A DNA stretch of 64,000 nt, taken from IMG/VR virus record IMGVR_UViG_3300042402_002641, positions 124,001-188,000 of that record. One strand, 5' to 3'. A model generated the notes under the pieces. That model saw only the letters and a program-made list of their open reading frames with translations. It was not told the DNA's origin and searched no databases. Shown here in pieces: positions 1 to 59,103 of the stretch. The stretch's first letter is position 1. The number at the start of each line of letters is the position of its first letter. The position numbers and the translations under genes were made by a program.

Positions 1-1282
1 TTCGGAACTTGCGTATGTGTCCTTTGCGTATAGGTTCGCTGAGAAACAGACCGTAGAAGTTTTCTTCGCCTATGTCGTTGATCACTATCAACGCAGCTTC
101 ACCGAGGCTGTTGTTTTCCACTGAATAATAGATCTGCGGTACACCGCCCTGTTCTTCTCCACGGTCGTGTATGTATCTCAGTATTTCCCGCATGTGTTTG
201 ACCTGCTGCTGCACTGGAGTCTGGTTATGATGCCATTCTGCTACCTGAGTCATCGTAGGCATTTCATAGACCTGTATAGCACCATAATCTCCACCAGTGC
301 CTAGGCTGGGATCTAGAGCCACTAGATAAGTGGCCTTGTAGTCTACGTCCTTGTACCAGCGTGTCTGTCCCATGGTCATCACAGGATCTGAGCCGGCGAG
401 CTCAACCAGTTTCACAGAGTTGATTAGGGTTTCATCAAAAATCAAGAATTCGCATTCAAACTCACGGCGGAAACGTTCTTCACCAATTTTAGATCTTTCT
501 TGGTTGGCCCAGGCATCATCTCGATCTGGATGCTCCGACCAATGAGCTGTATATGAAGCAAATCCGTTTTGTCCTACATCAGCTTCGTTACCAAACTCAT
601 CAAATTTTTTGTTAGCCTCGGCCCATATCAACGCAAACTGATCTTCGTCTGAGTTTGGGGTTGATGTGATTATACACTTACCGCCAGTGGCTAGTGTAGG
701 GCTTAATGCAGTCCAGAATTCTTTGGCCTTTTCGGGAGGTTGCACGAACGCAAACTCATCGCAGTAGATCAATGAAAGAGATTTACCACGACCAGTGTTT
801 TCTGTTGTAGTTGTGGCCTGTATCCTAGCACCGTTGTCATATTCAATGGTGTTTCTATTATATGAATACACACCTGCACGTATGAAGTCTGGTAGATTTT
901 CGTAGCCAAATCGATATCTATCCATGATGTCTTTGGCACCTTCATATTTGTGGGCAGCTATCAATACCTGACAGTCTGGTATGAACATGGTGTACCAAAG
1001 CAGATAGCCAGTAGCACAGGTGGTCTTGCCCATCTGGCGAGGCAGCATGGCTATACACTGTCTATTGGTGTGTATGCTTTTTATCAATCTTTCTTGATAT
1101 TCGTAGGGTTCGAAATTAATAGCGCCACGAGTTGGATGCTGTATCTTTAAAAAATTGGTGCAGAAATACAAAGGTCCTGTAACAGGATCCAAGCAGGCTT
1201 CAAGATGCTTGACCTCATCCATTGTGTATTTGGTCTGAGCGTGAGCCTTTTTAATCAGTACGCCGTCGAGTGATTTTCCCAT
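1..1282 (-). CDS. terL: Terminase large subunit (T4 gp17-like), C-terminus truncated by window edge; absent from the ORF track
   Basis: Manual translation from ATG 1282 (MGKSLDGVLIKKAH...): Walker A LPRQMGKTT, Walker B LIYCDEFAF, coupling motif IITSTP, nuclease-domain VALDPSLG; open to the window start. Confidence 0.95.
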   Translation of the reverse strand, partial: MGKSLDGVLIKKAHAQTKYTMDEVKHLEACLDPVTGPLYFCTNFLKIQHPTRGAINFEPYEYQERLIKSIHTNRQCIAMLPRQMGKTTCATGYLLWYTMFIPDCQVLIAAHKYEGAKDIMDRYRFGYENLPDFIRAGVYSYNRNTIEYDNGARIQATTTTENTGRGKSLSLIYCDEFAFVQPPEKAKEFWTALSPTLATGGKCIITSTPNSDEDQFALIWAEANKKFDEFGNEADVGQNGFASYTAHWSEHPDRDDAWANQERSKIGEERFRREFECEFLIFDETLINSVKLVELAGSDPVMTMGQTRWYKDVDYKATYLVALDPSLGTGGDYGAIQVYEMPTMTQVAEWHHNQTPVQQQVKHMREILRYIHDRGEEQGGVPQIYYSVENNSLGEAALIVINDIGEENFYGLFLSEPIRKGHIRKFR

Positions 1283-1287
1283 ATGTT

Positions 1288-1293
1288 TATTTA
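1288..1293 (-). promoter_or_regulatory. Late-promoter-like TAAATA 5 nt upstream of the terminase ATG
   Basis: Minus strand TAAATA-aacat-ATG; matches the core of the T4 late promoter TATAAATA and recurs across the window. Confidence 0.7.
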
Positions 1294-1296
1294 ATG

Positions 1297-1324
1297 AAAA
1301 AAATAGGCTCCGGAGAGCCTATTT
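1297..1324 (-). terminator. Rho-independent terminator
   Basis: AAATAGGCTC-4 nt loop-GAGCCTATTT stem followed by a T-tract on the minus strand, after the 1341-2042 gene. Confidence 0.8.
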
Positions 1325-1340
1325 GGATATGTAGATATAA

Positions 1341-2042
1341 TTAAGTTGTTGGCAGAGTGGTACCGTCTATAGCAGTCACTGTGACATCTGTGTGAGCTGC
1401 TTTTGGAGTAATGGGTGCTTTCACTGTCAATACTGCTTGTGTTTCAGCGCCTTGTGTTCCGTCATAGACTCTGTAACTCCTAGTGAATATGTCGCCTGCC
1501 CCAACTGCTGTACTAACATCGGTCACATAATCTTGATAGCCTTTGGTGATACCACGAACCACTAATTCTTCAATAGCCAACGCAGTTGTGCTGGTAGTAG
1601 TAGCTGAGCCTAATGTTTCGTGATCTGAATTTTTAGCAACACCACCTGTGGTTCTGCCTTCTGCGATCAAGAAATTTTGTACGTTGCCCAACACAAAGGC
1701 ATCTCTGTCATACTGCACGGTAAATGTTAGAGTAACTGTGACATCGTCTGCATTATCTAATGCGCTTGGGCCTGTAGATTCTAATTCTTCTATGTCTAAG
1801 ATTCTAAAATCACCACCACGACCTAGATTTTCTAAAATTCCTTGCCAGCGTAGATTGCCTCGCGCTCTGCGTTGACCGTTAGCTAATGTAGTGTTTTGTG
1901 TTGCAAATGCACTGCTGTCTCTGGTTTCTACACCGCCTGCATCTGTGTCAGCTGCTGTGCTGGAATATCCTGAGAGATCGATCACAACACGGTATAGGCC
2001 TGGTGTAAGTTGATTTTCGTTTTGTTGAAATCCTGATGCCAT
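1341..2042 (-). CDS. Hypothetical protein, Thr/Ala/Gly-rich, probably virion-associated
   Basis: 233-aa ORF coupled to the upstream gene (stop/start overlap at 2042); no family recognised. Confidence 0.75.
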   Translation of the reverse strand: MASGFQQNENQLTPGLYRVVIDLSGYSSTAADTDAGGVETRDSSAFATQNTTLANGQRRARGNLRWQGILENLGRGGDFRILDIEELESTGPSALDNADDVTVTLTFTVQYDRDAFVLGNVQNFLIAEGRTTGGVAKNSDHETLGSATTTSTTALAIEELVVRGITKGYQDYVTDVSTAVGAGDIFTRSYRVYDGTQGAETQAVLTVKAPITPKAAHTDVTVTAIDGTTLPTT

Positions 2043-2800: not shown

Positions 2801-3367
2801 TTAACTCCCTAAGGCGCTTCGAGCACCTGCTTTGTCTTGTTTGCCCTTGGGCAGTTTGTATTCTACGTTGATGCCATCCTTCTTGCGATCTTTGGCAGCT
2901 TTGTTCAAATCTTTTAAGAAACTCTTGTTGAAATCATCACCAAAATAGTCTTTGTGTTTGATTTTTCCTGTGCCTTTTTCCATGTCCTGTTCATCTAACA
3001 GTGCATCTCCTGTAGGCTCATTGTCCATAAACAGCTGATCTATTTCTGTAGGTTCATTGCTACCACGCACACGGAAACAGTCTTCGGTGATGCCAGATCC
3101 TTTGATCATGTCAGTGATTTCCGGAGGAGTTACTGGGTATTCTGTAACCACTTCGAATACAGTGACTTCCATGTTGGACTTGCCAGGAAAATCTAACGGA
3201 AACTTTTGTATAGGTGTTGTGCTCATCTTTTCAAAGGTTACCACCTTGCAGCGTTCTAGCTTGGTCTTGAGACTTTCCTGAAAATTCTCAGGAATTTCGC
3301 CAGCAACCTTAACCTTGAAGCTGTAGATTTTTTTGTTTTCAGTGAGATATTCTTTAAAAGTTTTCAT
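2801..3367 (-). CDS. Hypothetical protein
   Basis: 188-aa ORF beginning MKTFKEYL, preceded by TAAATA-N5-ATG. Confidence 0.75.
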   Translation of the reverse strand: MKTFKEYLTENKKIYSFKVKVAGEIPENFQESLKTKLERCKVVTFEKMSTTPIQKFPLDFPGKSNMEVTVFEVVTEYPVTPPEITDMIKGSGITEDCFRVRGSNEPTEIDQLFMDNEPTGDALLDEQDMEKGTGKIKHKDYFGDDFNKSFLKDLNKAAKDRKKDGINVEYKLPKGKQDKAGARSALGS

Positions 3368-3375
3368 ACTTGTAT

Positions 3376-3852
3376 TTATGCTTTTCCGCTTAATTTTTTC
3401 AGTAGCTCATTGCGGTCTGTGATCACATATGCTGCACCGTTGATCACTCCGTCCTGTTCATTGCCTGCGTCATTGTCTATTTTCAGCTTCTTCAGTTGTA
3501 GATCTACGCTTTTGAGTTTTTTATCTATTTTGTTGGTTTTAGCAGTAATAGCATTGCCCATCATGCTGGCAGCTACTTCGAATATACGACCAGCATAACG
3601 AACTTCTACGTTCATGCCTAGGTCCATGAGATCATCATAGGCAGCTTCTGCTTTTTTTGCCAGTTCATCCAGTTCTCGATCATCCAGCTCATCTAATTCT
3701 TTGATCTGCGGCAGGCCTCTGGTGATTTCTGCTACTCTACGATAGCTGTCATCTAGACTCTGCACCTGTTCATGCGTAGGTGCTTCGACTGGCGCTTCCG
3801 CTAGAGATTCGGTGGTTTCGAGATTCAACAATTCTTCAAGTCTTTTGGTCAT
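3376..3852 (-). CDS. Putative terminase small subunit (T4 gp16-like)
   Basis: Helical 158 aa; RIFEVAASMM resembles gp16 RAYEVAG; C-terminal ITDRNELLKKL resembles VGSTAELQKLL; near terL. Confidence 0.65.
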   Translation of the reverse strand: MTKRLEELLNLETTESLAEAPVEAPTHEQVQSLDDSYRRVAEITRGLPQIKELDELDDRELDELAKKAEAAYDDLMDLGMNVEVRYAGRIFEVAASMMGNAITAKTNKIDKKLKSVDLQLKKLKIDNDAGNEQDGVINGAAYVITDRNELLKKLSGKA

Positions 3853-3859
3853 ATCGTAC

Positions 3860-4300
3860 TTATCTTCGTTTTGTGCCCTGATGGAAAATGTCTGTTTCGT
3901 TAATCACACGAAACTTGATGTTCTGTTGTTTGCACCAAGCATTAGCAGCTTCCCATTTGGCCATATTTTTTACATACTGCTGTTGATTGTATTGACTCTT
4001 ACCCACAGCTTCTCTGAAGGTGTGATTAGAAGGTTTTACCTCCACAACTTCTGCGTGTTTAGTACCGTTCTTATCTTGATATACAATAAAGAAATCTGGC
4101 ACATATATGGTACTGCGACCAGTTAATGGATCTCTATAAGGTATCTTGATGCTTTCGCTAGCCCAATTCTGTACGCCTGGATGTTCATCTAGCATTCTCA
4201 TGAACACAAACTCCCACGAGCTACGAGCCAATGGAGTTTTTAATCCCACATATTTGGCAGGATTTTTCATTTCAAATCGACCTTGTGCGAATTTGCCCAT
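3860..4300 (-). CDS. Head completion protein (T4 gp4-like, TnsA/PD-(D/E)xK nuclease fold)
   Basis: KNPAKYVG...RSSWE...WASE...IPY...YVPDF...EVKP...KWEAA...FRVINE parallels gp4. Confidence 0.85.
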   Translation of the reverse strand: MGKFAQGRFEMKNPAKYVGLKTPLARSSWEFVFMRMLDEHPGVQNWASESIKIPYRDPLTGRSTIYVPDFFIVYQDKNGTKHAEVVEVKPSNHTFREAVGKSQYNQQQYVKNMAKWEAANAWCKQQNIKFRVINETDIFHQGTKRR

Positions 4301-4666: not shown

Positions 4667-5770
4667 TTACGCTACGTTTCCTGGATCAGAAGGAAAATCT
4701 CCTACTAATGGTCTTTGGGTCGCTGAGGTAGAAGGTGAACGATTAGCACTTTTAGGAAACACAGCTCCTACTACTCCACCTACGGTGCTGATAGCTGAGG
4801 AAATATTACCCGGATTGCTGAGTATATTAATAGCTTCAGATTTTAATTGGGCCGATGATAATGACTTGATATTTTTATAAGTGTTGATTGACGCTATCGC
4901 TGTGCTGAGAAATCCACCCGGACTGTCGAAGGCTGCGCCTGATCCTAGATTACCAAATATCTGTTCAAGGCCATCTAATACCCCACCTTCTCCGGTAAGT
5001 GTAGCAACACCACCGCCTGCTACTGATATAGGACTTGGTACTGAATCATAGTGCAGTGTTGCAAATCCTTTGGGACTATTATAGGCTACCTGACCTGCTG
5101 AATATTTCACTGATTCATACTCTAAAGTCATTGTGCTTTCTGCGAATTCGCTAGCAGAGTAATCCATGTTGCCATGGCTCCAAGTTTTAATTTTCGGATT
5201 AATCAATGTATAGCCCAGAAATCTTCTACGAGCCATGGTATAGATACTAACTGATTTGAAAAATCCAGCGGTAACGTCGTTGTCCATACCATATCGAAAA
5301 TTATCTTTTGGTGTATCAGCTGCACGATATTTGGTTTCAGAGTAAGCTGATTCTGGAAGTTGTCTATCGGCAATATAATATCCATAGTACACAGCCCACA
5401 TGGCACTGATAACTCCGGTAGCATCGTCATGCATGGTGATGTTTACTGGTTCGTAATTGAAATTTTTATAGATTATTTTTTTTCTATTGTACTGGTTTTT
5501 TACCACACTATCAAAATTATATTTGGGCAGTTCTGCAGTTTTTACAAGTAACCCAACTTCATCGTGATGTTTATTAGAAAATGCTGGAACTCGCATCACA
5601 TTTTTGTCTATCTCAAATCTTACATAGTAGTTGAACTTGGTGCGAGGAGCCAGCCGCATGTTGCCATCTATGAACAGCTTAGTGGCGTGACGCCAGTTTG
5701 CGCTCTGTCCTTTGGGAGTCAATAAGCCTTCGCCGACACCAGTGAGAAATCGTGTGAAATAGTTTGCCAT
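4667..5770 (-). CDS. Tail tube-like / tube-initiator protein (gp19/gp54-like fold)
   Basis: LLVKTAELPKYNF...NQYNRK...YEPVNITMHDD...FAESTMTLEYE resembles the gp19 family; directly follows the tube gene. Confidence 0.65.
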   Translation of the reverse strand: MANYFTRFLTGVGEGLLTPKGQSANWRHATKLFIDGNMRLAPRTKFNYYVRFEIDKNVMRVPAFSNKHHDEVGLLVKTAELPKYNFDSVVKNQYNRKKIIYKNFNYEPVNITMHDDATGVISAMWAVYYGYYIADRQLPESAYSETKYRAADTPKDNFRYGMDNDVTAGFFKSVSIYTMARRRFLGYTLINPKIKTWSHGNMDYSASEFAESTMTLEYESVKYSAGQVAYNSPKGFATLHYDSVPSPISVAGGGVATLTGEGGVLDGLEQIFGNLGSGAAFDSPGGFLSTAIASINTYKNIKSLSSAQLKSEAINILSNPGNISSAISTVGGVVGAVFPKSANRSPSTSATQRPLVGDFPSDPGNVA

Positions 5771-5787
5771 ACAAATATTTATGTCAC

Positions 5788-5815
5788 AAAAAAAGCTCGA
5801 AATAATCGAGCTTTT
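5788..5815 (-). terminator. Rho-independent terminator after the tail tube gene
   Basis: AAAAGCTCGA-AATAA-TCGAGCTTTT perfect stem with T-tract; TAAATA-N5-ATG follows immediately. Confidence 0.8.
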
Positions 5816-9940: not shown

Positions 9941-10053
9941 CCCATTTTCTCCTGGTAATAGTTGCTCATAATATTTAGCCGCCAAGTGTAAAAATGGATG
10001 GTTAATATCAGGATAAAAGGGGTGGAAAAGGTATAGATACGTTAAATATCTTT

Positions 10054-10389
10054 ATGAGACCAATGTGTAAGTGTGGTGTAAGGCCATGTGCTGTGAACTA
10101 CAAGAAAAATTCCAAGACCTACTACAGAAGTCTTTGTGAAATATGCATGTCACACGGTGTATACACAGGAGTACCTCGATGGTTACGTAGCGGCTACAAG
10201 ATGAAATCGCAGTGTGAGAAATGCGGCTTTAGGTCACCGCACGTAGAAGTATTCAGGGTATTTCACATAGACAGCAATCTAGACAACTGCCGTCCTGCGA
10301 ATCTCAAAACCATATGTCTAAACTGTGCTGGCGTTCTGAGCAAAGAGGGAATTGCTTGGAGACAGGGAGATCTCGTTGCTGATTATTGA
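10054..10389 (+). CDS. Zn-finger / HNH-like protein
   Basis: Cys pairs (CKC, CEIC, CEKC, CLNC) and FHIDSNLDNCRPANLKTICLNC resembling the HNH core; TAAATA-N5-ATG upstream. Confidence 0.65.
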   Translation: MRPMCKCGVRPCAVNYKKNSKTYYRSLCEICMSHGVYTGVPRWLRSGYKMKSQCEKCGFRSPHVEVFRVFHIDSNLDNCRPANLKTICLNCAGVLSKEGIAWRQGDLVADY

Positions 10390-11044: not shown

Positions 11045-11803
11045 TTAACCAATTATCCAAGAATAACCACTGCCGCCGGGCACTAGTTTCATTAGATCAT
11101 CCACTAGTTTTTCCATTTCTGCAGTAGCTTCAGTTTTCATAGCAGCACCGTTAAGGCCTGATCCGCCCTGTGGTCCTGCTATCTGTGCGAATTTTTCGCG
11201 AGCCTGTCCCAGCATCATCTTGCAGTTGGCCAAGGTATAGTCCTTGATCCACTGTCCGGAATATATGTCATCTATGATGGCAAAGTCAGGTTTGGTGTTA
11301 TATACCTGTATCATCACTGACTCTTCACCTCTGGGACGCTGATGTATGATTAATTTGTGGCTCTGCGGATGCCATGTGAAGTTTATAAAAGACCCAAACA
11401 TTTTACCTATCAATTCTTGATACTGTGAGAATAATTCATATGTGGCTAATCCGCCCATGTTTGTGGAACTCAAAAGATAGGTATTAGAGTAGGCCAAGTT
11501 AAAGGGTTCAAACACAGTACCGCCCGTGCCATTACCTGTTCTAGATCCTACTGAACGACGAAATATCTGTCGAACCTGTTGTATTTCTTTAGGTAGGATA
11601 TATTCGTTAACACTTTCAGTTAGTGTTAGAAAACAATAACTTTCCTCTACGGCGTTGTCGCTGCGCTGCCGAAATACCGCTAGGCTGCGGTTTAGGGCAG
11701 TTTCGTAGTGTATGGGGTCTAGTTCTATGTCGATCATGCCGTCGCCCAGCATAGCCTTACAGTAGTCGAAAACCTGTTGTTTTGCTTGATCAGTTGTGCT
11801 CAT
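11045..11803 (-). CDS. Neck protein (T4 gp13-like)
   Basis: Start reassigned to 11803 (TAAATA-N5-ATG); LGDGMIDIEL, KMMLGQAREKF..I.GPQGGSGLNG are typical of gp13. Confidence 0.85.
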   Translation of the reverse strand: MSTTDQAKQQVFDYCKAMLGDGMIDIELDPIHYETALNRSLAVFRQRSDNAVEESYCFLTLTESVNEYILPKEIQQVRQIFRRSVGSRTGNGTGGTVFEPFNLAYSNTYLLSSTNMGGLATYELFSQYQELIGKMFGSFINFTWHPQSHKLIIHQRPRGEESVMIQVYNTKPDFAIIDDIYSGQWIKDYTLANCKMMLGQAREKFAQIAGPQGGSGLNGAAMKTEATAEMEKLVDDLMKLVPGGSGYSWIIG

Positions 11804-11836
11804 ACTCTTATTTATTGCAGCGGTAAATATATGACT

Positions 11837-13228
11837 ATGCCAAGACTCAGTCTCTACCGGCCTCAAAAAGGCAATGATTACCGTTTTATAGATAACACCA
11901 TCTGGGAAATGTTCCAGGTTGGTGGCACGGATGTGCTGGTGCACAAATATCTTGGACCCGCTGCCGCTGTGCAGGGCAACACACCCTCAACACCTACATA
12001 TGCTGCCGACGATCCTTTTAACATACAAGATCTCTTGTTCTTAGAAAATCGTGATCGTAAATATGATCCAGACATTTATCTGCTTAGAGGTGTATATAGT
12101 CTTTCAGACATAGATTTCAATCTCAGCCAATTTGGACTGTTTCTACAGAATGACACTATTTTTATCACCTTCCACATCACAGACACTGTGGAAAAAATTG
12201 GTAGAAAAATCATGGCAGGTGATGTGATAGAACTGCCGCACCTCACTGACGAATATGCTCTAAACGATCTACAGTATGCGCTGAAAAGATTCTATGTCAT
12301 TGAAGAAGTTAGCAGAGCTGCCGAAGGATTTTCTGTCACCTGGTATCCACATCTGTATCGAGCCAAATGCAAACCATTGGTAGACAGCCAAGAATACAAA
12401 CAGATCTTAGATGGTATCGCCAACACAGATGCAGACAAGGGAACCTATAATGCAAATATCACATACTACTCCGGTGACATTGTTACTGGTGCTGATGGTA
12501 AGAAGTATGAAGTCGTTCAAGAAGTTACTGGAATAGCACCGCCTAATGTAACCTACTATGCAATAGCAGACACGCTGAAAGATATCATCTCAACCTACAA
12601 CAAAGAAATGCAGATCACTTCGGCTGTGTTAAATCAAGCAGAAGCAGACGCTCCTAAGAGTGGTTATGACACTAGCAAGTTCTATACCTTACAGAGAACA
12701 GACGACGGTACTGCTGAAATTGCATCAACAGATGCCACTGATGTTACTGTAGATGCTGCTACGCAGGCTACTGATGAGAATGGAAATCTTCTTTACGATA
12801 CGAACGGTGAGCCTGTTTACGTAGGACAGACTGCTAGTTCTGTATTGATGCCCGCAGACGGCGACGGATATAATGGATACCTCACTCGTGATGGTGTTCC
12901 TCCCAACGGTGCTCCGTTTACCGCAGGCATTGCATTTCCTATTAACCCCACTGTGGGACAGTTTGCACTCAGAACAGATTACTTGCCTAATAGACTATTC
13001 AGATTCGACGGATCTAGATGGCGCAAATTTGAGGACAATGTACGTATGACTATGAACAATCTCGGTGCTAGTGATGTGGGTGCAGGTGACACTTATGCTG
13101 GCAAAGATATTCGCCAGACACAAAAGGCCACATTCGTAAACAACACCACAGTAACTACTATAGATGGTCATGTGACTGAAGAAAAACAAAGCCTTACCAA
13201 GGCACTAAGACCACAGGCGGACGAATAA
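11837..13228 (+). CDS. Neck protein (T4 gp14-like) with inserted and extended domains
   Basis: MPRLSLYRP...LSQFGLFLQND...GDVIELP...YRAKCKP resembles gp14; start could be 11831 or 11837. Confidence 0.7.
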   Translation: MPRLSLYRPQKGNDYRFIDNTIWEMFQVGGTDVLVHKYLGPAAAVQGNTPSTPTYAADDPFNIQDLLFLENRDRKYDPDIYLLRGVYSLSDIDFNLSQFGLFLQNDTIFITFHITDTVEKIGRKIMAGDVIELPHLTDEYALNDLQYALKRFYVIEEVSRAAEGFSVTWYPHLYRAKCKPLVDSQEYKQILDGIANTDADKGTYNANITYYSGDIVTGADGKKYEVVQEVTGIAPPNVTYYAIADTLKDIISTYNKEMQITSAVLNQAEADAPKSGYDTSKFYTLQRTDDGTAEIASTDATDVTVDAATQATDENGNLLYDTNGEPVYVGQTASSVLMPADGDGYNGYLTRDGVPPNGAPFTAGIAFPINPTVGQFALRTDYLPNRLFRFDGSRWRKFEDNVRMTMNNLGASDVGAGDTYAGKDIRQTQKATFVNNTTVTTIDGHVTEEKQSLTKALRPQADE

Positions 13229-14766: not shown

Positions 14767-14780
14767 CGCTAAGTACACAG

Positions 14781-15176
14781 ATGCAACAGCGTGCCGGACT
14801 GCTATTTTTAGCCAAAACCACAGGTAGAATCCTGTTGATTCTTGAGGATCAACGATGGACTGTACCCACTTTTGTGAGGTCAGGACCGTTGTTGGAAGAC
14901 AGTGCACCACTGTTCAAAAATTATGCCACGGGTAGGATACTGCCTATTGAGTTGTATCTATCAGAGGATCGAGGATTTGAATACGGTACATATGTGTGTG
15001 TGGTGGACCAAGAGTTTTTAAACTCTGCTGTTCGAACTGTGTGCTGGGCCGACCTCGATGATCTTCCTAAACAACTGCACCTGGGTTTGAAAACCACGCT
15101 GAACAATCAAGTGATTAGAATTAAAATTGAAACTATCATGGAGTTAGAAAATGTCAAGCCTACTACAGAAATCTAG
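14781..15176 (+). CDS. Nudix-fold-like protein lacking a recognisable Nudix box
   Basis: AGLLFLAKTTGRILL...W...IELYLSED..FEYGTYVCVVDQEF...W.DLDDLPKQLH.GL recalls phage Nudix proteins; TAAGTA-N5-ATG supports a start at 14781. Confidence 0.55.
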   Translation: MQQRAGLLFLAKTTGRILLILEDQRWTVPTFVRSGPLLEDSAPLFKNYATGRILPIELYLSEDRGFEYGTYVCVVDQEFLNSAVRTVCWADLDDLPKQLHLGLKTTLNNQVIRIKIETIMELENVKPTTEI

Positions 15177-15425: not shown

Positions 15426-17270
15426 TTAGAGAGCGACAAAGTTCTTGACAGTTATAGTTCCCACCATGCCTAGATGGGATTGACACTGATATCTGTAACC
15501 GCCTGATATGGAAGACGGAATTTTCCAATACAGCGTTCCGCTGGTTTTGGCCTGGGCCGCTGAACCTGTGCTAACTGCGCCAGTAGTGCTCACATGCACT
15601 AGTCCAGTATCGTAGTTTACTCCAGTGCCGTCTTGTATCAAGAATGGGTGACCGGAGGCTCCGGCTAAATTAAATGCAATAGTAGTGCCATTGATAGCGT
15701 ATATAGTAGGATCATCTGCGGTTCCATACTGATCGAATCTATAGGCCGATGTACCATTGGCAGTTACATCCAACATGGTGATGGCTGGAAGATATATTCG
15801 ATCTATGGTCAGGGATGCGGAAACTGCATCTGTAAGGTCATCAAATGCACTAGCACCTCCTGATGCTGTGCTGGTGATGGTGATAGTGTCCGTGCCTGCA
15901 ACTGTGGTTATCGATATGCCGGTGCCAGCTACTAGCGTAAGAGTGTCAGTGGCTGAATCAGCCACAACTGAAGTTTGTCCAGCCACTGCTATGGTGCTAA
16001 AACTATCAGATGAGACGCCGCCGCCAGTTGAATTGATAGTAATAGTGTCTGTACCAGCATCGGTGGTGATGGTAATATTAGTTCCTGCTACCAAGGTCAA
16101 CGTGTCTGTGGCAGAATCTGCCACAACATTCGATTGCCCCGCCACTGCGATTGTAGCAAAACTGTCTGCAGCTGGCGCAGCCCATGTGTTGTCTCCCCTC
16201 AGGAACGTGGTCACATTCCTAGTACCAGCAGTGCCTAGTCTCAGCACCGGAACAGTACCCGAATCTAAATTTGTAGCATTTAGTGCAGTAATATTGGCGC
16301 CACTGCCGCTGAACGATGTGGCAGTGAGTAATCCGACATCTGATATGGTTGCTGAACTGTTTTGTATAATAGTACCTGTAGTGCCATCATAGCGTATGAT
16401 AGCGTTGTCTACATACCCGCCGCCAGCACTAAGTACATCGCCAGTTCCTGCTCCTGATGCGCCGGCTGGTCCTGGGGGTCCTGGGGGTCCTTGTGTGCCG
16501 GTAGAAGAAGTACTTTGTCTAGAACCATCTGCAAAGACTATTTCATTTCCTACTACCACATCCGAATCAAAGGCCACCGTGGGGATGAATGTAATTGCAG
16601 AACTGTCATCGCTGTCTATGACTGTGCCTGCAAAGGTCACTGAGCCTGTGTTTGCTACCGATGAGATTGTGTAAACATCAGCAGTCGAATCATTACTTGA
16701 GATAATAGATATACCCGATCCTTCTACCAGCGTAACAGAATTAGGAACTATGGATTCACTGGCAACTGGCACCCAGGCACTTGCGTGTGCGTAATACAGT
16801 TTCCCTGTGTCATGTGCGTGAGCTATCATCCCATGATAGTCCACCGCAGATACTTCTGAAACTAAATCCGCCAATGTGTCCCAATGAAATCGTATTCGAT
16901 TTTTCTGTCCACTGACTTCAATTATTCCTGTAAGATTTAATGTACTGGTGTTAGCATCCCATGCTAAATTTGTGAGATCGTTGACCTGAGATCCTGCAGC
17001 GGGATAATAGGCTAATCTTCCAGCAACTCCTGCCTGCACTCCCCCACTGAATCCGGCTGCGTTTGCCTTGGCTAAGAAAGCTGCATTAGTAACATTTGCA
17101 AAATCGCTCCTAGCAAGAGCAACACCTCCTTTTGTGATTCCATCAAAAATTCTAAGAGTCTTGGTTTGTTTGTCATAGGCGATATCGCCATTTGACGCAG
17201 TTTGTCGATCAAGATACGCAGTTTCTTTAGGATCTACCCTGAGGGTTTTAAAAAAGTTAGAGTTTGACAT
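15426..17270 (-). CDS. Tail fibre/whisker-like protein: Mtd_N-like N-terminus, short collagen stretch, tandem beta repeats, C-terminal cupredoxin-like domain
   Basis: GDIAYDKQTKTLRIFDGITKGG; GPPGPPGPAG; two ADSATDTLTLVAGT repeats; GHPF...YQCQSHLGMVG. Confidence 0.75.
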   Translation of the reverse strand: MSNSNFFKTLRVDPKETAYLDRQTASNGDIAYDKQTKTLRIFDGITKGGVALARSDFANVTNAAFLAKANAAGFSGGVQAGVAGRLAYYPAAGSQVNDLTNLAWDANTSTLNLTGIIEVSGQKNRIRFHWDTLADLVSEVSAVDYHGMIAHAHDTGKLYYAHASAWVPVASESIVPNSVTLVEGSGISIISSNDSTADVYTISSVANTGSVTFAGTVIDSDDSSAITFIPTVAFDSDVVVGNEIVFADGSRQSTSSTGTQGPPGPPGPAGASGAGTGDVLSAGGGYVDNAIIRYDGTTGTIIQNSSATISDVGLLTATSFSGSGANITALNATNLDSGTVPVLRLGTAGTRNVTTFLRGDNTWAAPAADSFATIAVAGQSNVVADSATDTLTLVAGTNITITTDAGTDTITINSTGGGVSSDSFSTIAVAGQTSVVADSATDTLTLVAGTGISITTVAGTDTITITSTASGGASAFDDLTDAVSASLTIDRIYLPAITMLDVTANGTSAYRFDQYGTADDPTIYAINGTTIAFNLAGASGHPFLIQDGTGVNYDTGLVHVSTTGAVSTGSAAQAKTSGTLYWKIPSSISGGYRYQCQSHLGMVGTITVKNFVAL

Positions 17271-35427: not shown

Positions 35428-35448
35428 AATTTATTCTCCATGATATAT

Positions 35449-42984: not shown

Positions 42985-43002
42985 TTTCTACTCCGTTATT
43001 AT

Positions 43003-46000
43003 TTATCTGAATGATCTATGAAACATCGATTGTGCTAACATTGTTCCTCTAATTCCTACTGTGGGTCCAACAAAGTCTGTACGTACTGGGAATATATTGC
43101 TTTGATTCGCAGTGGTGTCGATAAGATTTGGACCTACTAGTATAGTTCCTGCTATAAAACTTGTAACAGCTATTTCGCTACCGCCAACAGATAGTCTATA
43201 GGCCAGATAGGATTTGATTGCTTTCTGGGTCGGTACTACGTTATTTGAATCTTCTGTAAACAATGGATCAGTAGAAAATTCACGTACGACTGCTCCAGAT
43301 CCGCCTACACGTATTCCCCCAAGACGTAATTCACTTAATCCATTTAGATCAAAAAAGTCCGCAGAAATAGTAACAACACCTGTGGCCTGTTCTACAGCGA
43401 ATAATTCGCCTGCACGGAAGTTACCGCTTTGATCGGTAGATGTATAAAATACTCTACCACGATTTGCTTCCACTACTTCGTTTTCTGGTGCAGGAGTATA
43501 GAATCCACTGTATAATTCTGGGTAATTGGTTTCTTCGAAATTTCCTGTACCTATGTCTAAGAAATCGTGTCCAGTAACACGACACTGACTTATGTCTGTT
43601 CTAATAACTATTGATGTGTCGTGTTGTACAAAATCACGTGATTTAAATTCTGGACTGATTCTAATTTGTGCAGACAATCCTAAAGGTGTATCGTCAAGAG
43701 GTGTAATAGCAACCAACGTGTAAAAATCTGGAAGATTACCTATTGTTAGACTAGATCCAGGGCCCGGATACTGTGTTAGGCCGTTCAAAACACAGAATTT
43801 TCCTACCGGTATTACATCGGCATAGCCGTCTCCGGTGATTGTCACAGTTGTGCTGGTAGTTCTATATCCCAGTCCTCTGTTAATCCAACTTGGTTGTGCT
43901 AGAACTCCGTCGCCGGTTCTACATTCTACAGCAGGATCAGAAGAATTATTGGGATCTATGATTGTTAGAGTTGGTGATTCAATATATCCAGAACCAGGAT
44001 CCCATATTTTTACAGTACGGATTATGCCGCTACTCAGTGTCAGACGCCCTAATGCTGTGGCACCGGTTTGTATTTTATTGATATAATTAGAGTTATCAAC
44101 AGTGATCCACATTGGTGTTTTCTTGCCTACCGTTGAATCTCGCGAATCAATGTACGGATTACCAAATGCCAAGTTCTGCCATAGTTTACTGTTGGCCAAT
44201 TGCCTTGAAGTCCAAACTACTCCGTCATAACTGGTAGCGGCAAAATTAGTCTCAAAGGCACTGGCATCGTTTCCTATGTTTCGGCCACCGGTGTCACCTA
44301 TGGCAAAAAATACTCCTTGTCCATATTTGATTTTTTTCCAATAGTGTGCGGTTGATCCATCTTGTGTGGGCATCGTAGCAGGTAACCAATCAACGCCATC
44401 AAAGCTGTATGCAACTTCGCCTGTACTTGATAATGCCACAAATCTATTATTACCGTAACTGATACTGGTCCAATCTTTAGCAGACGAATCACCAATCACA
44501 TCCATGATATGTCCAGCCCACGACCATGTATTTGCTATAGAATTATAGGTTCCTACTGCAACAGTATTGCCGCTGTTTGCTAATACAACAAACGTGTTTT
44601 TACCATACGCAATATCGATCCATTCGTTGAGGGTGGAGTCGCCAAATGTAGGCAGTGCCACTGTGGTCCAACTTGTGCCGTTCAAACTATAAGCGGCAGA
44701 GTTAGAATTTGTGGCTATAGCAAGAAATACACCGCCACCGTAGATGGCACTATTCCAAGATCTAGATGCCGGCATGGATCTAGTGGTCCATGTAAATCCA
44801 TCCGGGGAGCTGGCTGCCACCGCACTGCCTGTGCGTATGGCCACAAATATATGATTACCCAATGCGGGATATGTAACTCTGCCTGCTGCAAGACATTGCC
44901 AATTTCCCGAGCTCGGCATGTTAAACCCAACCCAAGTTGTTCCGTCGTCACTATACATAGCGACATTGGTGCCGGAAGCCACAGCTATGAATTTGCCGCC
45001 TGCTCCAAAACTTTCATTTCCTGTATTTACAATCTGTTCTGCTACTGATAACACAGAGTTTGTGCTGTCATCGCTTACGTCAAGTACTTTCATTACTATG
45101 TCGTTGCCTGGAGTATCGCCACCGAGTAAATTTCCAGGAATAGTTAATAGTTGATTAACAGCATATCCTGCTCCTCCGTCATTCAGCGTGATGGTGTAGG
45201 TTCTACCATTTTTCACCACATTGAATGAGGCGTAGGCCGGAGTAACTTCAATCACAGTACCAGTTCCTGCTGTGGTGGTAGCTATATCTGTAAACGATTC
45301 AGTTGTTTCACCATAAATTATGTTGGTCCAAGATGCACTCTCTGGGCCAATAATCTGCGTGGCCGAATAAGGCGGTGCTGAAAACACCGGTCTTGGTTCT
45401 ATTCTATATACCGTATTAGTTAATAAGGGTACTGTTGCCGGTTTTCCTGATACCACATGATCCCAACCGATTGTGCCATCTGATTCTTTATAAATCGTAG
45501 CGATCTTAGTAATATTATCGTAGGCTCCTATATATCCGTATTGACCCGTTCCAGCACCGCTGGTTATGATAATTCTCATACCATTATACTGTGTAAATGT
45601 GTTTTGATCGTTTGAAGCCAATGTGATAGTGGTGGCATCTCCTCCTTGCGCATTGTTTCCTGTGGTAACAAAACCTCCCCCGCCTATTGATTGCGGTCCA
45701 GTGGTATTTTTATCTATAATTCTAGCTTCAAAAACAGCATCGTCTCTGAAATCTTCAAATATCACACTTGCATTAACACCGGCACCCTGAACACTGCCTT
45801 GTGCAGTGGTATAGTTTTCACCACAGTGAGAAAATTCAATATTCTGTATTTCGTCTACGAAATCTCCGGCAAATGCTGCAGCGACCGTTGCTTGTCCGCT
45901 GCGATTATCTATCACAGCAGTTCGCGGTATTTCGTCGACATTAACACCATCTGAAATCACGCCATACGATCCGTATGAACTGTTTCCGTTAGTGGCACGT

Positions 46001-54054: not shown

Positions 54055-54324
54055 TTATCCGCGGCTCAGCAGACTCATCAGTTCCATTTTTTCCACTGTG
54101 GCAACGATTCGGTTGATTTCATCTAGTTCTCGCTGTGCCTTTTCTAAATGGCTGCGACTATGTGTTTGTCTATAGCGTATGCCAGCGTTGCTGAACTCTA
54201 CGATGTGCTGTTCTACCATACGTTCAATTTGTTGAACATCGTGAGCAAACATAGGAAATCGCATGCGCCATTGATTGATGTGTCTGCGCAGTTGGGGGAA
54301 ATCTTGGTCACTGGTTACCTGCAT
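54055..54324 (-). CDS. Hypothetical protein
   Basis: Start reassigned to 54324 (TAAATA-N5-ATG after the capsid terminator). Confidence 0.65.
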   Translation of the reverse strand: MQVTSDQDFPQLRRHINQWRMRFPMFAHDVQQIERMVEQHIVEFSNAGIRYRQTHSRSHLEKAQRELDEINRIVATVEKMELMSLLSRG

Positions 54325-54340
54325 CAAGGTATTTACGCCA

Positions 54341-54367
54341 AACAAAAAGGCTCCGAAGAGCCTTTTT
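54341..54367 (-). terminator. Rho-independent terminator after the major capsid gene
   Basis: AAAAAGGCTC-TTCG-GAGCCTTTTT then GTTT on the minus strand. Confidence 0.88.
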
Positions 54368-57313: not shown

Positions 57314-57325
57314 CGTCCGATCCTA

Positions 57326-58171
57326 TTATCTACGACCACGGAAAAGGCTTTGCTTGTTGTCAGCTGATTCTTTCGCACCAGCTTTCTCAGCACCATGTCC
57401 GGGTTCTTTCTTAGAGAAAGCACCGCCTGCTTTGCCGCCTGGGACATTGATGTTACCAGCATTATCTTCAGTTGGCTTACCTTTTAACAGTCCGGAACCT
57501 TTGAGTTCGCCTGTTTCTGAACCAGGTGCGCCATTTTTGCCGCTGAGAATGTTAGCAGTTGTCCCGCCCATGTCATTCTTGCCAGCTACGATTGATTTAG
57601 TGTTGACACCGTTGTCGCCCATTTTTGCAGGAGCAACTTTCTCAACATACTCACGCACGGTTTCAAGATCGAAATCATCTTTCATTTTGTCGCCCATGCC
57701 GCCCATGTCGTCACCGCCCATGTCGTCACCGCCCATGTCGCCCATGTCACCACCACCTTTGAGTTCATCAAATTTGGCCTGTAGTTCATCAACAATGCTG
57801 TCTAGGTCTTGGAATAGTTCTTCTTCGGACTTTTCTTCCATGTCGTCGTCACCCATTTCTAGATCACCTTCTAGGTCATCTGTGGGGTCACCACCCATCA
57901 TATCTGGATCTTCGTCATCAGCTTCGATAGCGATGTCTTCAAATTCTTCGTCTACTTTTTCGTCTTCTGCATCATCATCTTTTGCAGCTTCTTCTACATC
58001 CTCGTCATCTTCATCTTTTTCTTCTTCTTCAGCGATTTCGCTGTCGATCAAAGATTCGTAGATTTCACGGGATTGTTGTACCACATACTCGTGGAATAAT
58101 TCTTCAGCTTTCGCTTGATCGTCGTTTACGAGATGCTCAAGCATCTGTTGCAACAATTTTTTGTCTGCCAT
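57326..58171 (-). CDS. Acidic prohead core protein (gp67/gp68-like position)
   Basis: Very Asp/Glu-rich with GGDDM repeats; lies between portal and protease. Confidence 0.65.
   Translation of the reverse strand: MADKKLLQQMLEHLVNDDQAKAEELFHEYVVQQSREIYESLIDSEIAEEEEKDEDDEDVEEAAKDDDAEDEKVDEEFEDIAIEADDEDPDMMGGDPTDDLEGDLEMGDDDMEEKSEEELFQDLDSIVDELQAKFDELKGGGDMGDMGGDDMGGDDMGGMGDKMKDDFDLETVREYVEKVAPAKMGDNGVNTKSIVAGKNDMGGTTANILSGKNGAPGSETGELKGSGLLKGKPTEDNAGNINVPGGKAGGAFSKKEPGHGAEKAGAKESADNKQSLFRGRR
57690..57757. repeat. Tandem 15-bp-unit repeat encoding GGDDM/GDM
   Basis: gcccatgtcgtcacc repeated with degenerate flanks. Confidence 0.8.
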
Positions 58172-58234
58172 GTTATGTTCTCCTTTATATAGTCAAGGCT
58201 GTAAGTTATTTAACACTAAGATTATAAACCAGGG

Positions 58235-58882
58235 TTAAATGGTAGTTTTTTGATTGATTTGATCGGAATATATAGTGCCCGGAAACGTTCTATCAAAATC
58301 CTCAAATGTGATGTGACTGAGGTTTGACAGGGTTGGGCCTAGTTTGTCTGGTATAAATGCGCCGGGATCTGCCACTCTGAAGAATTTCACGTGTCTAAAT
58401 TCTTTGATGGTTTTTTCAGTTTGGCTCAGCCAATTGCCAAAATAAGTGGCGCTGTCTGAGCTTTTTTTATAGTTGTGAGTGTCGGCATACACATTGTTGA
58501 ATTTGCCATTGTCGCCTTGATAGTCAAATCCAAATATGTAGATATCTTTGTGACCCTGCGTGGCTGCGAACCATAAAGCTGTGGGTCCTGAACTCCAGCC
58601 TTTGTGAGGTGAAAAGAAATTGATATTATGTTTGGTGCTGATACCTTTGTTGGGATTAGTCCAGACCTGATGCTTTTTGTGATAGCCTGCACCTATGATT
58701 TCATTGACCATTTTTACATCTACAGCTATCAAATAGTGCGGAGAATATTCTCTGTACTGTGCGTTACAGCCATAGACTATGCCGCGGTCCATTGCACTGA
58801 GATGATTTAATTTCAGTCTACTGGTGCCGTTGCCTATAACGAATGCAGGATTATTCTGCAGGTGCTTCTGCTGGGGTTGCAT
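58235..58882 (-). CDS. DUF115/Maf-like (MptE-like, GT29/42-type fold) protein
   Basis: AFVIGNGTSR, YGCNA, YLIAVD, GWSSGPTAL..A...G.K.IYIFGFDY. Confidence 0.6.
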   Translation of the reverse strand: MQPQQKHLQNNPAFVIGNGTSRLKLNHLSAMDRGIVYGCNAQYREYSPHYLIAVDVKMVNEIIGAGYHKKHQVWTNPNKGISTKHNINFFSPHKGWSSGPTALWFAATQGHKDIYIFGFDYQGDNGKFNNVYADTHNYKKSSDSATYFGNWLSQTEKTIKEFRHVKFFRVADPGAFIPDKLGPTLSNLSHITFEDFDRTFPGTIYSDQINQKTTI

Positions 58883-59093
58883 ACATTTGTCTAATAAATC
58901 CCAGTTCTGACTCTGATTCTACTTGATGTGCTTCCGCCTGCAGTCTCAGTTGATTGATCTGCCGTAGGGTCAAACGTATTTTTCTAGTATCACTTTTCTT
59001 CACAACTGATGAATCTCTGCCAGCATCGTATCTACGATCATTGGCAAAGTCGTTGTTTTTTTCGTTAAAATAAAAAAATTCGTTTAGAAGCAT
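58851..59093 (-). CDS. Hypothetical 80-aa protein
   Basis: Start reassigned to MLLNEF at 59093 (TAAATA-N4-ATG). Confidence 0.7.
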   Translation of the reverse strand: MLLNEFFYFNEKNNDFANDRRYDAGRDSSVVKKSDTRKIRLTLRQINQLRLQAEAHQVESESELGFIRQMYATPAEAPAE

Positions 59094-59103
59094 AATGTAT
59101 TTA

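What the first reader, a model, noticed from the sequence alone, without database searches (positions are those of the whole stretch)
1282..59103. TAARTA-N5-ATG: probable leaderless late mRNAs
Seen: TAAATA or TAAGTA lies exactly 5 nt upstream of an ATG with no SD at starts 1282, 3367, 5770, 10054, 11803, 14781, 29046, 29103 and 54324, and 4 nt upstream at 3852 and 59093. Other genes have the motif further upstream with a clear SD (9940, 17363, 21265, 50267, 58171). Established: T4 gp55 late promoters (TATAAATA) initiate a few nt downstream of the motif. Inference: transcription starts at or next to the AUG, so many late genes, terminase included, would be translated leaderless. This may reflect host lineage or a phage translation strategy.
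Basis: partly seen in the sequence, partly recalled or inferred. Interest (0 to 1): 0.6.

Follow-up and report, generated by a model that had tools for sequence, protein, structure and literature searches.

The report
Promoters fused to start codons
In this uncultured aquatic jumbo phage and its many relatives, about forty genes have a promoter box placed so that transcription should begin on the A of the ATG, which predicts messenger RNAs with no ribosome-binding leader; this is a design T4 and PA5oct do not show, and no transcript ends have been mapped to confirm it.

Summary
In the 280-kb phage record that holds the window, TAAATA lying 5 nt before an ATG is the strongest hexamer-and-position signal upstream of gene starts: 18 seen against 0.23 expected, stronger than the Shine-Dalgarno motif. 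TAAATA as a whole is depleted in the genome. Anchoring on protein alignments rather than on the motif, relatives down to about 40-60% identity keep TAAATA 4-5 nt before the same start codons. This holds for terminase, tail tube, the 80-aa gene after the portal and others, while the spacer letters vary.

The genome encodes a gp55-like late sigma factor. In T4 numbering the box ends at -6, so a 5-nt spacer puts the A of ATG at +1.

A second class, outside the window, follows the same logic. Perfect TTGACA-N17-TATAAT promoters lie 6 nt before an ATG, which again puts the A at +1.

T4 and PA5oct show no such spacing peak. I found no gp33 or gp45 homologue.

No direct transcription-start data exist. 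Only metatranscriptome contigs were available, and they cannot show RNA ends.

It is a new variant of known kinds: T4-type late promoters and leaderless mRNAs.

The parts
1280..1293 (-). TAAATA (1288-1293), 5-nt spacer, ATG (1282-1280) of the large terminase gene. This is the predicted leaderless late promoter and start.
   Evidence: Eleven of 12 unique orthologous upstream contexts keep TAAATA at 4-5 nt.
1301..1324 (-). Intrinsic-terminator hairpin and T-run directly upstream of the terminase promoter box.
   Evidence: Listed by the terminator scan. The stem changes by paired substitutions in relatives.
3365..3378 (-). TAAATA-N5-ATG of a 188-aa gene. The TAA of the box is also the stop codon of the upstream gene (3376-3852).
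   Evidence: Eleven of 13 orthologous contexts have the 5-nt spacing.
3850..3862 (-). TAAGTA-N4-ATG of a 158-aa gene, a variant box.
   Evidence: TAAGTA at 4-5 nt in 12 of 13 orthologous contexts.
5768..5781 (-). TAAATA-N5-ATG of the tail tube gene.
   Evidence: All 22 distinct upstream sequences from relatives with 55-100% protein identity keep the terminator, GTGRCATAAATA and a 4-5-nt spacer before the ATG.
5788..5815 (-). Hairpin and run of seven T (terminator) directly upstream of the tube promoter box.
   Evidence: The sequence shows it directly. Fold energy is -21.6 kcal/mol for the 45 nt upstream. Compensatory stem changes appear in relatives.
9972..9977 (-). TAAATA 31 nt upstream of the sheath start (9940), with an AGGAG SD. 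This is a leadered late promoter, divergent from the one at 10043.
   Evidence: Both box and SD are conserved in relatives.
10043..10056 (+). TAAATA-N5-ATG of a conserved 111-aa ORF.
   Evidence: Ten of 10 orthologous contexts have TAAATA at 4-5 nt.
11801..11814 (-). TAAATA-N5-ATG of a 252-aa gene. This ATG is the real start, not the longest-ORF GTG at 11944.
   Evidence: relatives' proteins align from this ATG; 11 of 11.
11824..11839 (+). TAAATA-N7-ATG of the virion structural protein (start 11837). This predicts a 2-nt leader with no SD. It is divergent from and interleaved with the 11803 promoter.
   Evidence: spacing of 7 nt in 7 contexts, 8 nt in 2, 5 nt in 1.
14770..14783 (+). TAAGTA-N5-ATG just after the TGA stop of the sheath-stabiliser-like gene.
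   Evidence: TAAGTA or TAATTA at 4-5 nt in 10 of 10 orthologous contexts.
17268..17284 (-). TAAATA-N8-ATG of the 614-aa baseplate-wedge-like gene. This predicts a 3-nt leader.
29044..29105 (.). Symmetric divergent pair, CAT-N5-TATTTA-N34-TAAATA-N5-ATG, serving the starts at 29046(-) and 29103(+) in a low-GC island.
   Evidence: No orthologues were found in the relatives tested.
54322..54367 (-). Terminator hairpin, T-run, TAAATA (54330-54335), N5 and the ATG of an 89-aa gene.
   Evidence: In 13 of 14 orthologous contexts that anchor on an ATG, the box lies 4-8 nt before it.
59091..59103 (-). TAAATA-N4-ATG of an 80-aa ORF directly after the portal stop codon.
   Evidence: Of 68 unique orthologous contexts, 31 have a 4-nt spacer, 34 have 5 nt and 3 have 6-7 nt. 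These include relatives binned in MAGs from marine samples.
58207..58212 (-). TAAATA 35 nt upstream of start 58171, with an AAGGAG SD. This is a leadered late promoter.
   Evidence: It is conserved in more than 20 relatives.
43000..43005 (-). TAAATA 15 nt upstream of start 42984 (the 2511-aa gene). The predicted transcript would begin at or next to the GGAG of the SD.
35446..35451 (-). TAAATA 18 nt upstream of start 35427. This predicts a short leader containing GGAG.
63835..63861 (.). Overlapping divergent TAAATA boxes: 63835-63840 (+) for start 63873 and 63856-63861 (-) for start 63803. Both are leadered.

Best explanation
TAAATA is the -10-type box of this phage's late promoters. It is read by host RNA polymerase carrying the phage's gp55-like sigma factor.

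At about 23 genes in the genome the box lies 4-5 nt before the ATG. Twelve further copies outside the window match this; within the window the exact-box set is terminase, tail tube, the small gene after the portal, and the genes starting at 3367, 10054, 11803, 29046, 29103 and 54324, plus two TAAGTA variants at 3852 and 14781. With that spacing, transcription should begin on, or within a nucleotide of, the A of the start codon.

The resulting mRNAs would have no 5' leader and no Shine-Dalgarno sequence. They would be translated by direct recognition of the 5'-terminal AUG, while downstream genes in the same units use ordinary AAGGAG sites.

The same architecture is used with host-sigma-70-type promoters (TTGACA-N17-TATAAT-N6-ATG) at early or middle genes elsewhere in the genome. 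This makes it a genome-wide and clade-wide expression design, not a quirk of late genes.

Shown here: the motif, its spacing, its enrichment, its conservation, the sigma gene, the absence of SD and the ATG-only rule. Inferred: the exact transcription start, that these 5'-AUG RNAs are the translated species, and which sigma reads which box.
For: 1. Statistics. TAAATA at offset 5 is the top hexamer-and-offset signal before candidate starts (18 against 0.23 expected). TAAATA-N5-ATG occurs 20 times against 4.8 +/- 2.1 in Markov simulations, while TAAATA overall is depleted. 68 of the 158 copies lie in the roughly 8% of the genome that is intergenic.

2. Geometry. The T4 box spans -13 to -6, so N5 gives +1 = A. 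For sigma-70 the -10 hexamer spans -12 to -7 (textbook knowledge), so N6 gives +1 = A. The two classes peak at exactly those different spacings, 5 and 6. Position -1 is T or C in 15 of 19 sites, and +1 is A.

3. Bimodality. Late boxes lie either 4-5 nt from the start (23 genes) or about 15-36 nt from it, mostly with an SD, and only two of the called genes have a box at 6-14 nt. Consensus sigma-70 promoters are at 5-6 nt (14) or about 19-36 nt with an SD. In relatives, of 134 distinct consensus promoters, 37 are at 6-7 nt and only one lies between 8 and 19 nt.

4. Conservation, anchored on proteins rather than on the motif. The box lies at 4-5 nt in 11 of 12 terminase contexts, 12 of 12 tube, 10 of 10 for the 10054 gene, 11 of 11 for the 11803 gene and 65 of 68 for the gene after the portal. 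The spacer letters and the terminator stems change. Portal-identity ~60% relatives from marine-sample MAGs also keep the arrangement.

5. Context. Three sites follow intrinsic terminators directly. Five divergent promoter pairs occur in the window.

6. Sigma factor. A gp55-like gene matches phrog_12791 at E 1e-81 and phrog_234 at E 3e-25. Its only meaningful solved-structure match is T4 gp55, entry 7d7c.

7. Start codon. After TAAATA-N5, the triplets opening long frames are ATG 18, GTG 1 and TTG 0. Among genes with a strong SD, 17 of 97 start with GTG or TTG.

8. Coding from the ATG. Coding-type synonymous changes begin right at the ATG in the tube orthologues.

9. Method precedent. A -10-like box about 10 bp before the start codon is the accepted computational signature of leaderless genes (PMC3160421).
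Against: - No transcription start has been observed. The RNA-library data were assembled contigs. Some of them run across the predicted starts, to 5786 past 5770 and to 1312 past 1282, as read-through RNA or contaminating DNA would.
- gp33 and gp45 homologues were not found, so the T4 activation mechanism may not apply. The record is only about 79% complete.
- Only 2 of the 18 N5 boxes that open long ORFs carry the full T4 octamer TATAAATA.
- At six sites the TAA of the box is the stop codon of the upstream gene, and at three more the stop lies within 3-7 nt. There, read-through mRNA with re-initiation could also serve.
- Expected leaderless-mRNA features are weak. A at +4 is 58% against 42% in SD genes (p = 0.13), and the 5' ends are only marginally less structured (p = 0.04).
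- The host is unknown, so its ability to translate leaderless mRNA is unknown.
Confidence: 0.7

Rival explanations
1. TAAATA is a late promoter box, but its closeness to the ATG reflects genome compaction. The proteins are made mainly from longer read-through polycistronic transcripts, through coupling or re-initiation at the junction. The 5'-AUG transcripts are minor or poorly translated.
For: Six of 26 sites use the box's TAA as the upstream gene's stop codon, and three more have the stop within 3-7 nt. RNA-library contigs cross 5770, 3367 and 1282. Leaderless translation is reported as rare in one relative's host: 55 of 2187 primary and secondary transcription starts in P. aeruginosa PAO1 (PMC8244752).
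Against: Seventeen of 26 sites are not at a stop junction. Three sit directly behind strong terminators, which would block read-through. Divergent pairs have no upstream gene on the same strand. Compaction does not explain a spacing fixed at 4-5 nt for this box and 6 nt for TATAAT, the near-empty gap between about 8 and 14 nt, or the ATG-only rule. PA5oct and T4 are equally compact but show no such peak.
Confidence: 0.15
2. TAAATA-N5-AUG acts at the RNA level as a translation-initiation signal on leadered mRNAs. It would be an A/U-rich enhancer bound by protein S1, or a site favoured by ribosomes carrying the phage's own bS21. It would not be a promoter.
For: The phage encodes a bS21 homologue that is conserved across the clade. 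bS21 sits beside the anti-SD region and influences the choice between leadered and leaderless mRNA (PMC10491246). A/U-rich signals before start codons are known in SD-poor bacteria (PMC3160421).
Against: The same hexamer also occurs 15-36 nt upstream of SD-led late genes, where it cannot be a ribosome site, and it is conserved there too. A gp55-like sigma is present and the box matches the T4 and CBB late boxes. The parallel TTGACA-N17-TATAAT-N6-ATG class is unambiguously promoter-shaped. PA5oct also has a bS21-like gene but lacks the spacing peak.
Confidence: 0.08
3. The pattern is a chance or compositional effect of an AT-rich hexamer containing a stop codon lying near gene starts.
For: TAA-containing words are expected near gene ends. 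TAAGTA alone is not enriched genome-wide.
Against: The excess over Markov expectation is about 7 SD for N5. The unbiased hexamer-and-offset scan gives p about 4e-28. The TAA is out of frame with the downstream ATG at spacings of 4 and 5. Conservation is near-perfect across diverged relatives. T4 (35% GC) and PA5oct (33% GC) are more AT-rich and lack the peak.
Confidence: 0.02

Closest known systems
T4 late promoters (TATAAATA) read by gp55 with gp33 and the gp45 clamp
   Same: An A/T box at the -10 position with no -35 element, placed before structural and packaging genes on either strand. A gp55-family sigma factor is encoded.
   Different: In T4 the box lies about 13-32 nt before the ATG, peaking at 28, and is followed by an SD leader. 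No T4 octamer lies 5 nt before a long ORF. Here the core is the hexamer TAAATA, usually with R before it. It sits 4-5 nt from the ATG at about a third of the genes that have a box within 64 nt. No gp33 or gp45 homologue was detected. The sigma is about 100 residues longer than gp55 because of an insertion.
Predicted ATAAATA late motif of the Rak2-like jumbo phages CBB and GAP32
   Same: These are the nearest cultured relatives after PA5oct (portal about 48% identical). They have a gp55-like sigma, no gp33 or gp45, and ATAAATA before structural genes (PMC5259590).
   Different: That paper reports no fixed short spacing to the ATG and does not mention leaderless mRNAs. The closest isolate I tested, PA5oct, has no 4-5-nt peak.
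Thermus phage phiYS40, whose middle and late transcripts are leaderless
   Same: A large myovirus that produces most of its later mRNAs without leaders (PMC3594737).
   Different: Its host phylum, Deinococcus-Thermus, uses leaderless mRNA routinely. Its promoters are host-type rather than gp55-type. Its early mRNAs are leadered (my recollection of Sevostyanova et al. 2007, which I could not read), whereas here both classes include leaderless genes.
Bacterial and lambda leaderless genes with a -10 box abutting the ORF (lambda cI from PRM; Actinobacteria; Deinococcus-Thermus)
   Same: A TATAAT-like box about 6-7 nt before an AUG, no SD, and a requirement for AUG (PMC3160421, PMC12340547, PMC10491246). 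The phage's TTGACA-N17-TATAAT-N6-ATG class is of exactly this kind.
   Different: Here an alternative, phage-encoded gp55-type sigma appears to be used in the same way, with the spacing shifted by one nucleotide as its box geometry predicts.

Membership tests
T4-type late transcription (gp55 system) | A gp55-family sigma factor is encoded by the phage | tested here: met
   A 284-aa ORF at genome 195667-196521(-), outside the window, matches phrog_12791 at E 1e-81 and phrog_234 (the T4 gp55 family) at E 3e-25. BLASTP against T4 gp55 gives 29% identity over 93 residues. The only meaningful PDB match is gp55, entry 7d7c.
T4-type late transcription (gp55 system) | The 8-bp box TATAAATA at -13 to -6 | tested here: not met
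   Only the 6-bp core TAAATA is fixed. Position -12 is A or G in 15 of 19 sites and position -13 is not conserved. The full octamer occurs 14 times in the genome, and at only 2 of the 18 N5 sites that open long ORFs. It is a shortened variant, like ATAAATA in CBB.
T4-type late transcription (gp55 system) | No -35 element; the box lies before late (structural and packaging) genes on both strands | tested here: met
   No conserved column upstream of -12. The boxes lie before terminase, tube, sheath, portal-adjacent and baseplate genes on both strands. Sigma-70-like promoters are not enriched in window 1-12000.
T4-type late transcription (gp55 system) | Co-activator gp33 and sliding clamp gp45 | tested here: not met
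   The record has no match to phrog_254 (gp33) at E <= 10 or to phrog_223 (gp45) at E <= 1. The record is about 79% complete, and distant analogues could have been missed.
T4-type late transcription (gp55 system) | Transcription starts 6 nt after the last A of the box | not testable with these tools
   Only assembled contigs from RNA libraries were available, and they cannot show RNA ends.
Leaderless mRNA | A -10-type box ending 5-7 nt before the start codon | tested here: met
   TAAATA at 4-5 nt (23 called genes) and TATAAT or TATACT at 5-7 nt with a -35 element (17 called genes).
Leaderless mRNA | No Shine-Dalgarno sequence | tested here: met
   None of the 23 late-class starts has an SD-like word of 4 nt or more at a 3-11-nt spacing. 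The sequence between box and ATG is only 4-5 nt long.
Leaderless mRNA | The start codon must be AUG | tested here: met
   After TAAATA-N5, the triplets opening long frames are ATG 18, GTG 1, TTG 0. Among genes with a strong SD, 17 of 97 use GTG or TTG.
Leaderless mRNA | The 5' end of the primary transcript coincides with the A of AUG, and the protein begins there | not testable with these tools
   No raw 5'-end data. Indirect support only: relatives' proteins align from residue 1, and synonymous changes begin at codon 2.

The most novel reading that the evidence does not exclude
A large, uncultured marine and freshwater clade of jumbo phages, sister to the PA5oct, Rak2 and Atu_ph07 group, has evolved an expression architecture free of 5' UTRs. 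Both host-sigma-70 and phage gp55-type promoters are fused to start codons. The clade-conserved phage bS21, or another phage factor, would retune ribosomes of a probably proteobacterial host so that abundant structural proteins such as the tail tube can be made from leaderless mRNAs.
Probability: 0.15. Interest if true: 0.8.

Novelty: new variant of a known kind. Interest (0 to 1): 0.62.

Why it matters
- If the starts are where the geometry predicts, this is to my knowledge the first case of gp55-type late promoters used to make leaderless mRNAs. My searches of the open literature found no paper linking the two.
- It affects major virion and packaging genes across hundreds of environmental phage contigs.
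- It gives a simple rule for correcting start-codon calls in this clade. For example, 11803, 11837 and 59093 differ from the longest-ORF calls.
- It offers a one-nucleotide-resolution comparison of how two sigma types position +1.
- It raises a testable question: how does a host that also uses canonical SD sites translate a highly expressed leaderless tail tube mRNA, and does the phage-encoded ribosomal protein bS21 play a part?

Tried and rejected
- RNA evidence. Only freshwater and riverine metatranscriptome contigs held small shares of the stretch. When laid on 1000-6900 they were fragmentary and cannot show starts. This is inconclusive, not negative.
- Host identification. Portal relatives turn up in MAGs binned to many unrelated phyla (Crocinitomicaceae, Polynucleobacter, Neomarinimicrobiota and others), which looks like mis-binning. 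No host could be assigned.
- Hints on the host. The phage bS21 is closest to solved bS21 chains that I recognise from memory as gammaproteobacterial, and much weaker to the entry I believe is Flavobacterium johnsoniae. The promoters are canonical TTGACA/TATAAT, and SD use argues against Bacteroidota. These are leads only.
- A strict link between bS21 and the leaderless design. Rejected as a strict correlation, because PA5oct has a bS21-like stretch but no spacing peak.
- Phage-encoded IF3, IF1 or a second sigma-70-family factor. None was found.
- Leaderless-specific downstream features. A at +4 and weak 5' structure show only slight, mostly non-significant trends.
- Stop-codon overlap as the general cause. 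Rejected, because it applies to 6 of 26 sites.
- The motif-selected conservation profile is circular for the box columns. I rely instead on the protein-anchored tallies.
- One script timed out and one printed an over-long stretch through an indexing slip. Neither affects the results.

Full report
**What the window is.** The 64-kb window is bases 124001-188000 of a 280,019-bp linear IMG/VR virus record with 41.8% GC, estimated by CheckV to be about 79% complete. It carries the structural and packaging module of a jumbo myovirus. This includes the large terminase (start 1282, minus strand, running off the window), tail tube (4667-5770), sheath (6485-9940), a sheath-stabiliser-like gene, a baseplate-wedge gene, the portal (59104-60810) and two giant ORFs. 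The nearest cultured relatives are PA5oct-like Pseudomonas phages, Sinorhizobium phage Phosso, Atu_ph07 and the Rak2/CBB group, with the portal about 48-51% identical. Hundreds of closer relatives exist as environmental contigs.

**Checking the observation.**
- TAAATA with a 5-nt spacer: 1282, 3367, 5770, 10054, 11803 (minus strand), 29046, 29103, 54324.
- TAAGTA with a 5-nt spacer: 14781.
- TAAGTA with a 4-nt spacer: 3852.
- TAAATA with a 4-nt spacer: 59093.

Four of the five 'leadered' examples hold (9940, 17363, 21265, 58171). For 50267 I found no TAARTA within 90 nt.

**Enrichment.** Genome-wide, the distance from TAAATA to the next ATG peaks sharply: 20 cases at 5 nt and 10 at 4 nt, against about 1-5 at other distances. 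Of these, 18 and 7 open ORFs of at least 60 aa. Order-2 Markov simulations expect 4.8 +/- 2.1 and 3.9 +/- 1.8, while TAAATA overall is depleted, 158 against 234 +/- 14. I also made my own gene calls (335 genes) and scanned all hexamers at all offsets before 817 candidate ATG starts. TAAATA at offset 5 was the single strongest signal (18 against 0.23 expected, p about 4e-28), ahead of AAGGAG. 68 of the 158 copies lie in the roughly 8% of the genome that is intergenic. TAAGTA is not enriched genome-wide.

**Conservation.** I anchored on protein alignments that start at residue 1, not on the motif.
- All 22 distinct tail-tube upstream sequences (protein identity 55-100%) read: terminator hairpin, T-run, GTGRCATAAATA, a 4-5-nt spacer, ATG. 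The stems show compensatory changes and the spacers vary.
- The same holds for terminase (11 of 12 unique contexts), the 3367 gene (11 of 13), the 10054 ORF (10 of 10), the 11803 gene (11 of 11) and the gene just downstream of terminase (10 of 11).
- For the 54324 gene, 13 of 14 ATG-anchored contexts have the box at 4-8 nt. For the 80-aa ORF after the portal, 65 of 68 have it at 4-5 nt and the other three at 6-7 nt.
- The two TAAGTA sites keep TAAGTA (or TAATTA) at 4-5 nt in 12 of 13 and 10 of 10 contexts.
- Relatives found in MAGs from marine samples, with portals about 60% identical, keep TAAATA-N5-ATG after the portal.
- Leadered boxes, such as those before the sheath and the 58171 gene, are also conserved together with their SD.

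**Contrast with other phages.** In T4 the octamer lies 13-32 nt before the ATG, peaking at 28, and never 5 nt before a long ORF. PA5oct has no peak either, and there the gene after the portal is simply coupled to it through an overlapping stop and start. Two relatives of the window's own clade (G001, G002) show the same sharp peak at 5 nt. The trait is therefore specific to this aquatic clade.

**What reads the box.** The genome encodes a 284-aa gp55-like sigma factor, outside the window at genome 195667-196521 on the minus strand. It matches phrog_12791 at E 1e-81 and the T4 gp55 family phrog_234 at E 3e-25, and its only meaningful solved-structure match is T4 gp55, entry 7d7c. I found no homologues of gp33 or gp45, as was reported for phage CBB, which also has a predicted ATAAATA late motif (PMC5259590). 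No other sigma-70-family domain is encoded.

**Geometry.** The T4 late-transcription review numbers the first T of the box as -13 (PMC2988020). The final A is therefore -6, and a 5-nt spacer makes the next base +1, which is the A of ATG. Position -1 is a pyrimidine in 15 of 19 sites. This matches the usual pyrimidine(-1)/purine(+1) preference, which I state from general knowledge.

**A second class with the same logic.** This class lies outside the window. Perfect TTGACA-N17-TATAAT (or TATACT) promoters sit 5-6 nt before an ATG at about 14-17 genes, mostly in an early-looking region at genome 65-89 kb. Other copies of the same promoter sit 19-36 nt upstream with an AAGGAGCGA-type SD, and almost none lie in between. 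In relatives, 37 of 134 distinct perfect-consensus promoters lie 6-7 nt before an ATG, and only one lies at 8-19 nt. A sigma-70 -10 hexamer spans -12 to -7 (textbook knowledge), so a 6-nt spacer again makes the A of ATG +1. The one-nucleotide difference between the two preferred spacings is what the two box positions predict. I regard this as the best internal evidence that the constraint is on the transcription start.

**Features of the predicted mRNAs.** No SD is possible or present at these starts. The triplet after TAAATA-N5 that opens a long frame is ATG 18 times, GTG once and TTG never. Among genes with a strong SD, 17 of 97 use GTG or TTG. A -10-like box about 10 bp before the start codon is the accepted computational signature of leaderless genes (PMC3160421). 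The trends for A at +4 and for an unstructured 5' end are weak.

**Limits.** No transcription start was observed. The only RNA data were assembled contigs from freshwater and riverine metatranscriptomes. They hold small shares of the region, some cross the predicted starts, and they cannot show RNA ends or exclude DNA. At six of 26 sites the TAA of the box is also the upstream gene's stop codon, so read-through and re-initiation could contribute there. The host is unknown.

**Related known systems and novelty.** Leaderless phage mRNAs are known: lambda cI, and most middle and late transcripts of Thermus phage phiYS40 (PMC3594737). T4-type late boxes are known, and have been predicted in Rak2-like jumbo phages. 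My searches of the open literature found no paper that links a TATAAATA-type or gp55 promoter with leaderless mRNAs. The PA5oct and phage-bS21 papers do not mention it. I therefore class this as a new variant of known kinds, well supported by sequence statistics and comparative data but awaiting 5'-end mapping.

**Translation factors.** The phage encodes a ribosomal protein bS21 (PF01165, E 4e-19; genome 15418-15657, minus strand). It is conserved, with neighbouring genes shared with this genome, in 80 clade loci. bS21 lies beside the anti-SD region, and its absence favours leaderless mRNA in E. coli (PMC10491246). However, PA5oct also has a bS21-like stretch without the leaderless signature, so any link is speculative. 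No IF3 or IF1 homologue was found.

Noticed in passing
genome G000:C1 65000-89000 and scattered sites (e.g. 15379-, 47440+, 69144+, 69934+, 70549+, 71528+, 73595+, 82148+, 249056-, 262793-); outside the window: Perfect sigma-70 consensus promoters, often TTGACA-N17-TATAAT-ACACAC-ATG, lie 5-6 nt before an ATG. Sister copies of the same promoter carry 20-35-nt leaders with an AAGGAGCGA SD. The distribution is bimodal and is conserved in relatives.
   Followed up: yes
genome G000:C1:15418-15657 (-); loci L187, L238-L317: A phage-encoded ribosomal protein bS21 of 79 aa, conserved with neighbouring genes shared with this genome across 80 clade contigs. Its best solved-structure matches are chains I recognise from memory as gammaproteobacterial bS21. 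PA5oct has a weaker bS21-like stretch at 170958-171104.
   Followed up: partly
window 20000-32000: A low-GC island (about 35% against about 43%) beside a Nol-like carbamoyltransferase gene (18638-20332, minus strand). Many of its genes lack an SD. The genes at 29046(-) and 29103(+) had no orthologues in the relatives tested, yet they carry a perfectly symmetric divergent TAAATA-N5-ATG pair.
   Followed up: partly
window 10010-10042 (+) and orthologous places in L020-L052: A conserved purine tract, AAAAGGGG-n-G-n-AAAAGG, lies just upstream of the TAAATA box of the 111-aa ORF at 10054. It sits between the two divergent late promoters (sheath and 10054). Its function is unknown.
   Followed up: no
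window 35449-42984 and 43003-48489 (-); genome ORF ending at 219873 (+): Giant ORFs of 2511 and 1828 aa in the window, and an open frame of about 4600 codons elsewhere in the genome. The 2511-aa gene has TAAATA 15 nt before its ATG, so the predicted transcript would begin at its GGAG.
   Followed up: no
locus L047 (relative G002) about 13650-17700: In this relative an ORF of about 800 aa with no match to this genome lies where the terminase start is expected. The following 541-aa ORF matches terminase only from residue 87, starting at its own residue 416. Both ORFs are preceded by TAAATA-N5-ATG. This may be an insertion of a mobile element or intein-like sequence.
   Followed up: no
window 11801-11839, 9972-10048, 17279-17343, 63835-63861: Late promoter boxes often come as closely spaced or interleaved divergent pairs serving genes on opposite strands.
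   Followed up: partly
genome G000:C1:69473-69646 (+): Two tRNA genes, Met-CAT and Arg-TCT, lie inside the early promoter-rich region. The window itself has none.
   Followed up: no
loci L170-L185 (genome contigs): Portal relatives of this phage clade sit in MAGs assigned to many unrelated phyla, and two of those contigs are 153 kb and 335 kb long. These are most likely phage contigs mis-binned into bacterial MAGs.
   Followed up: no
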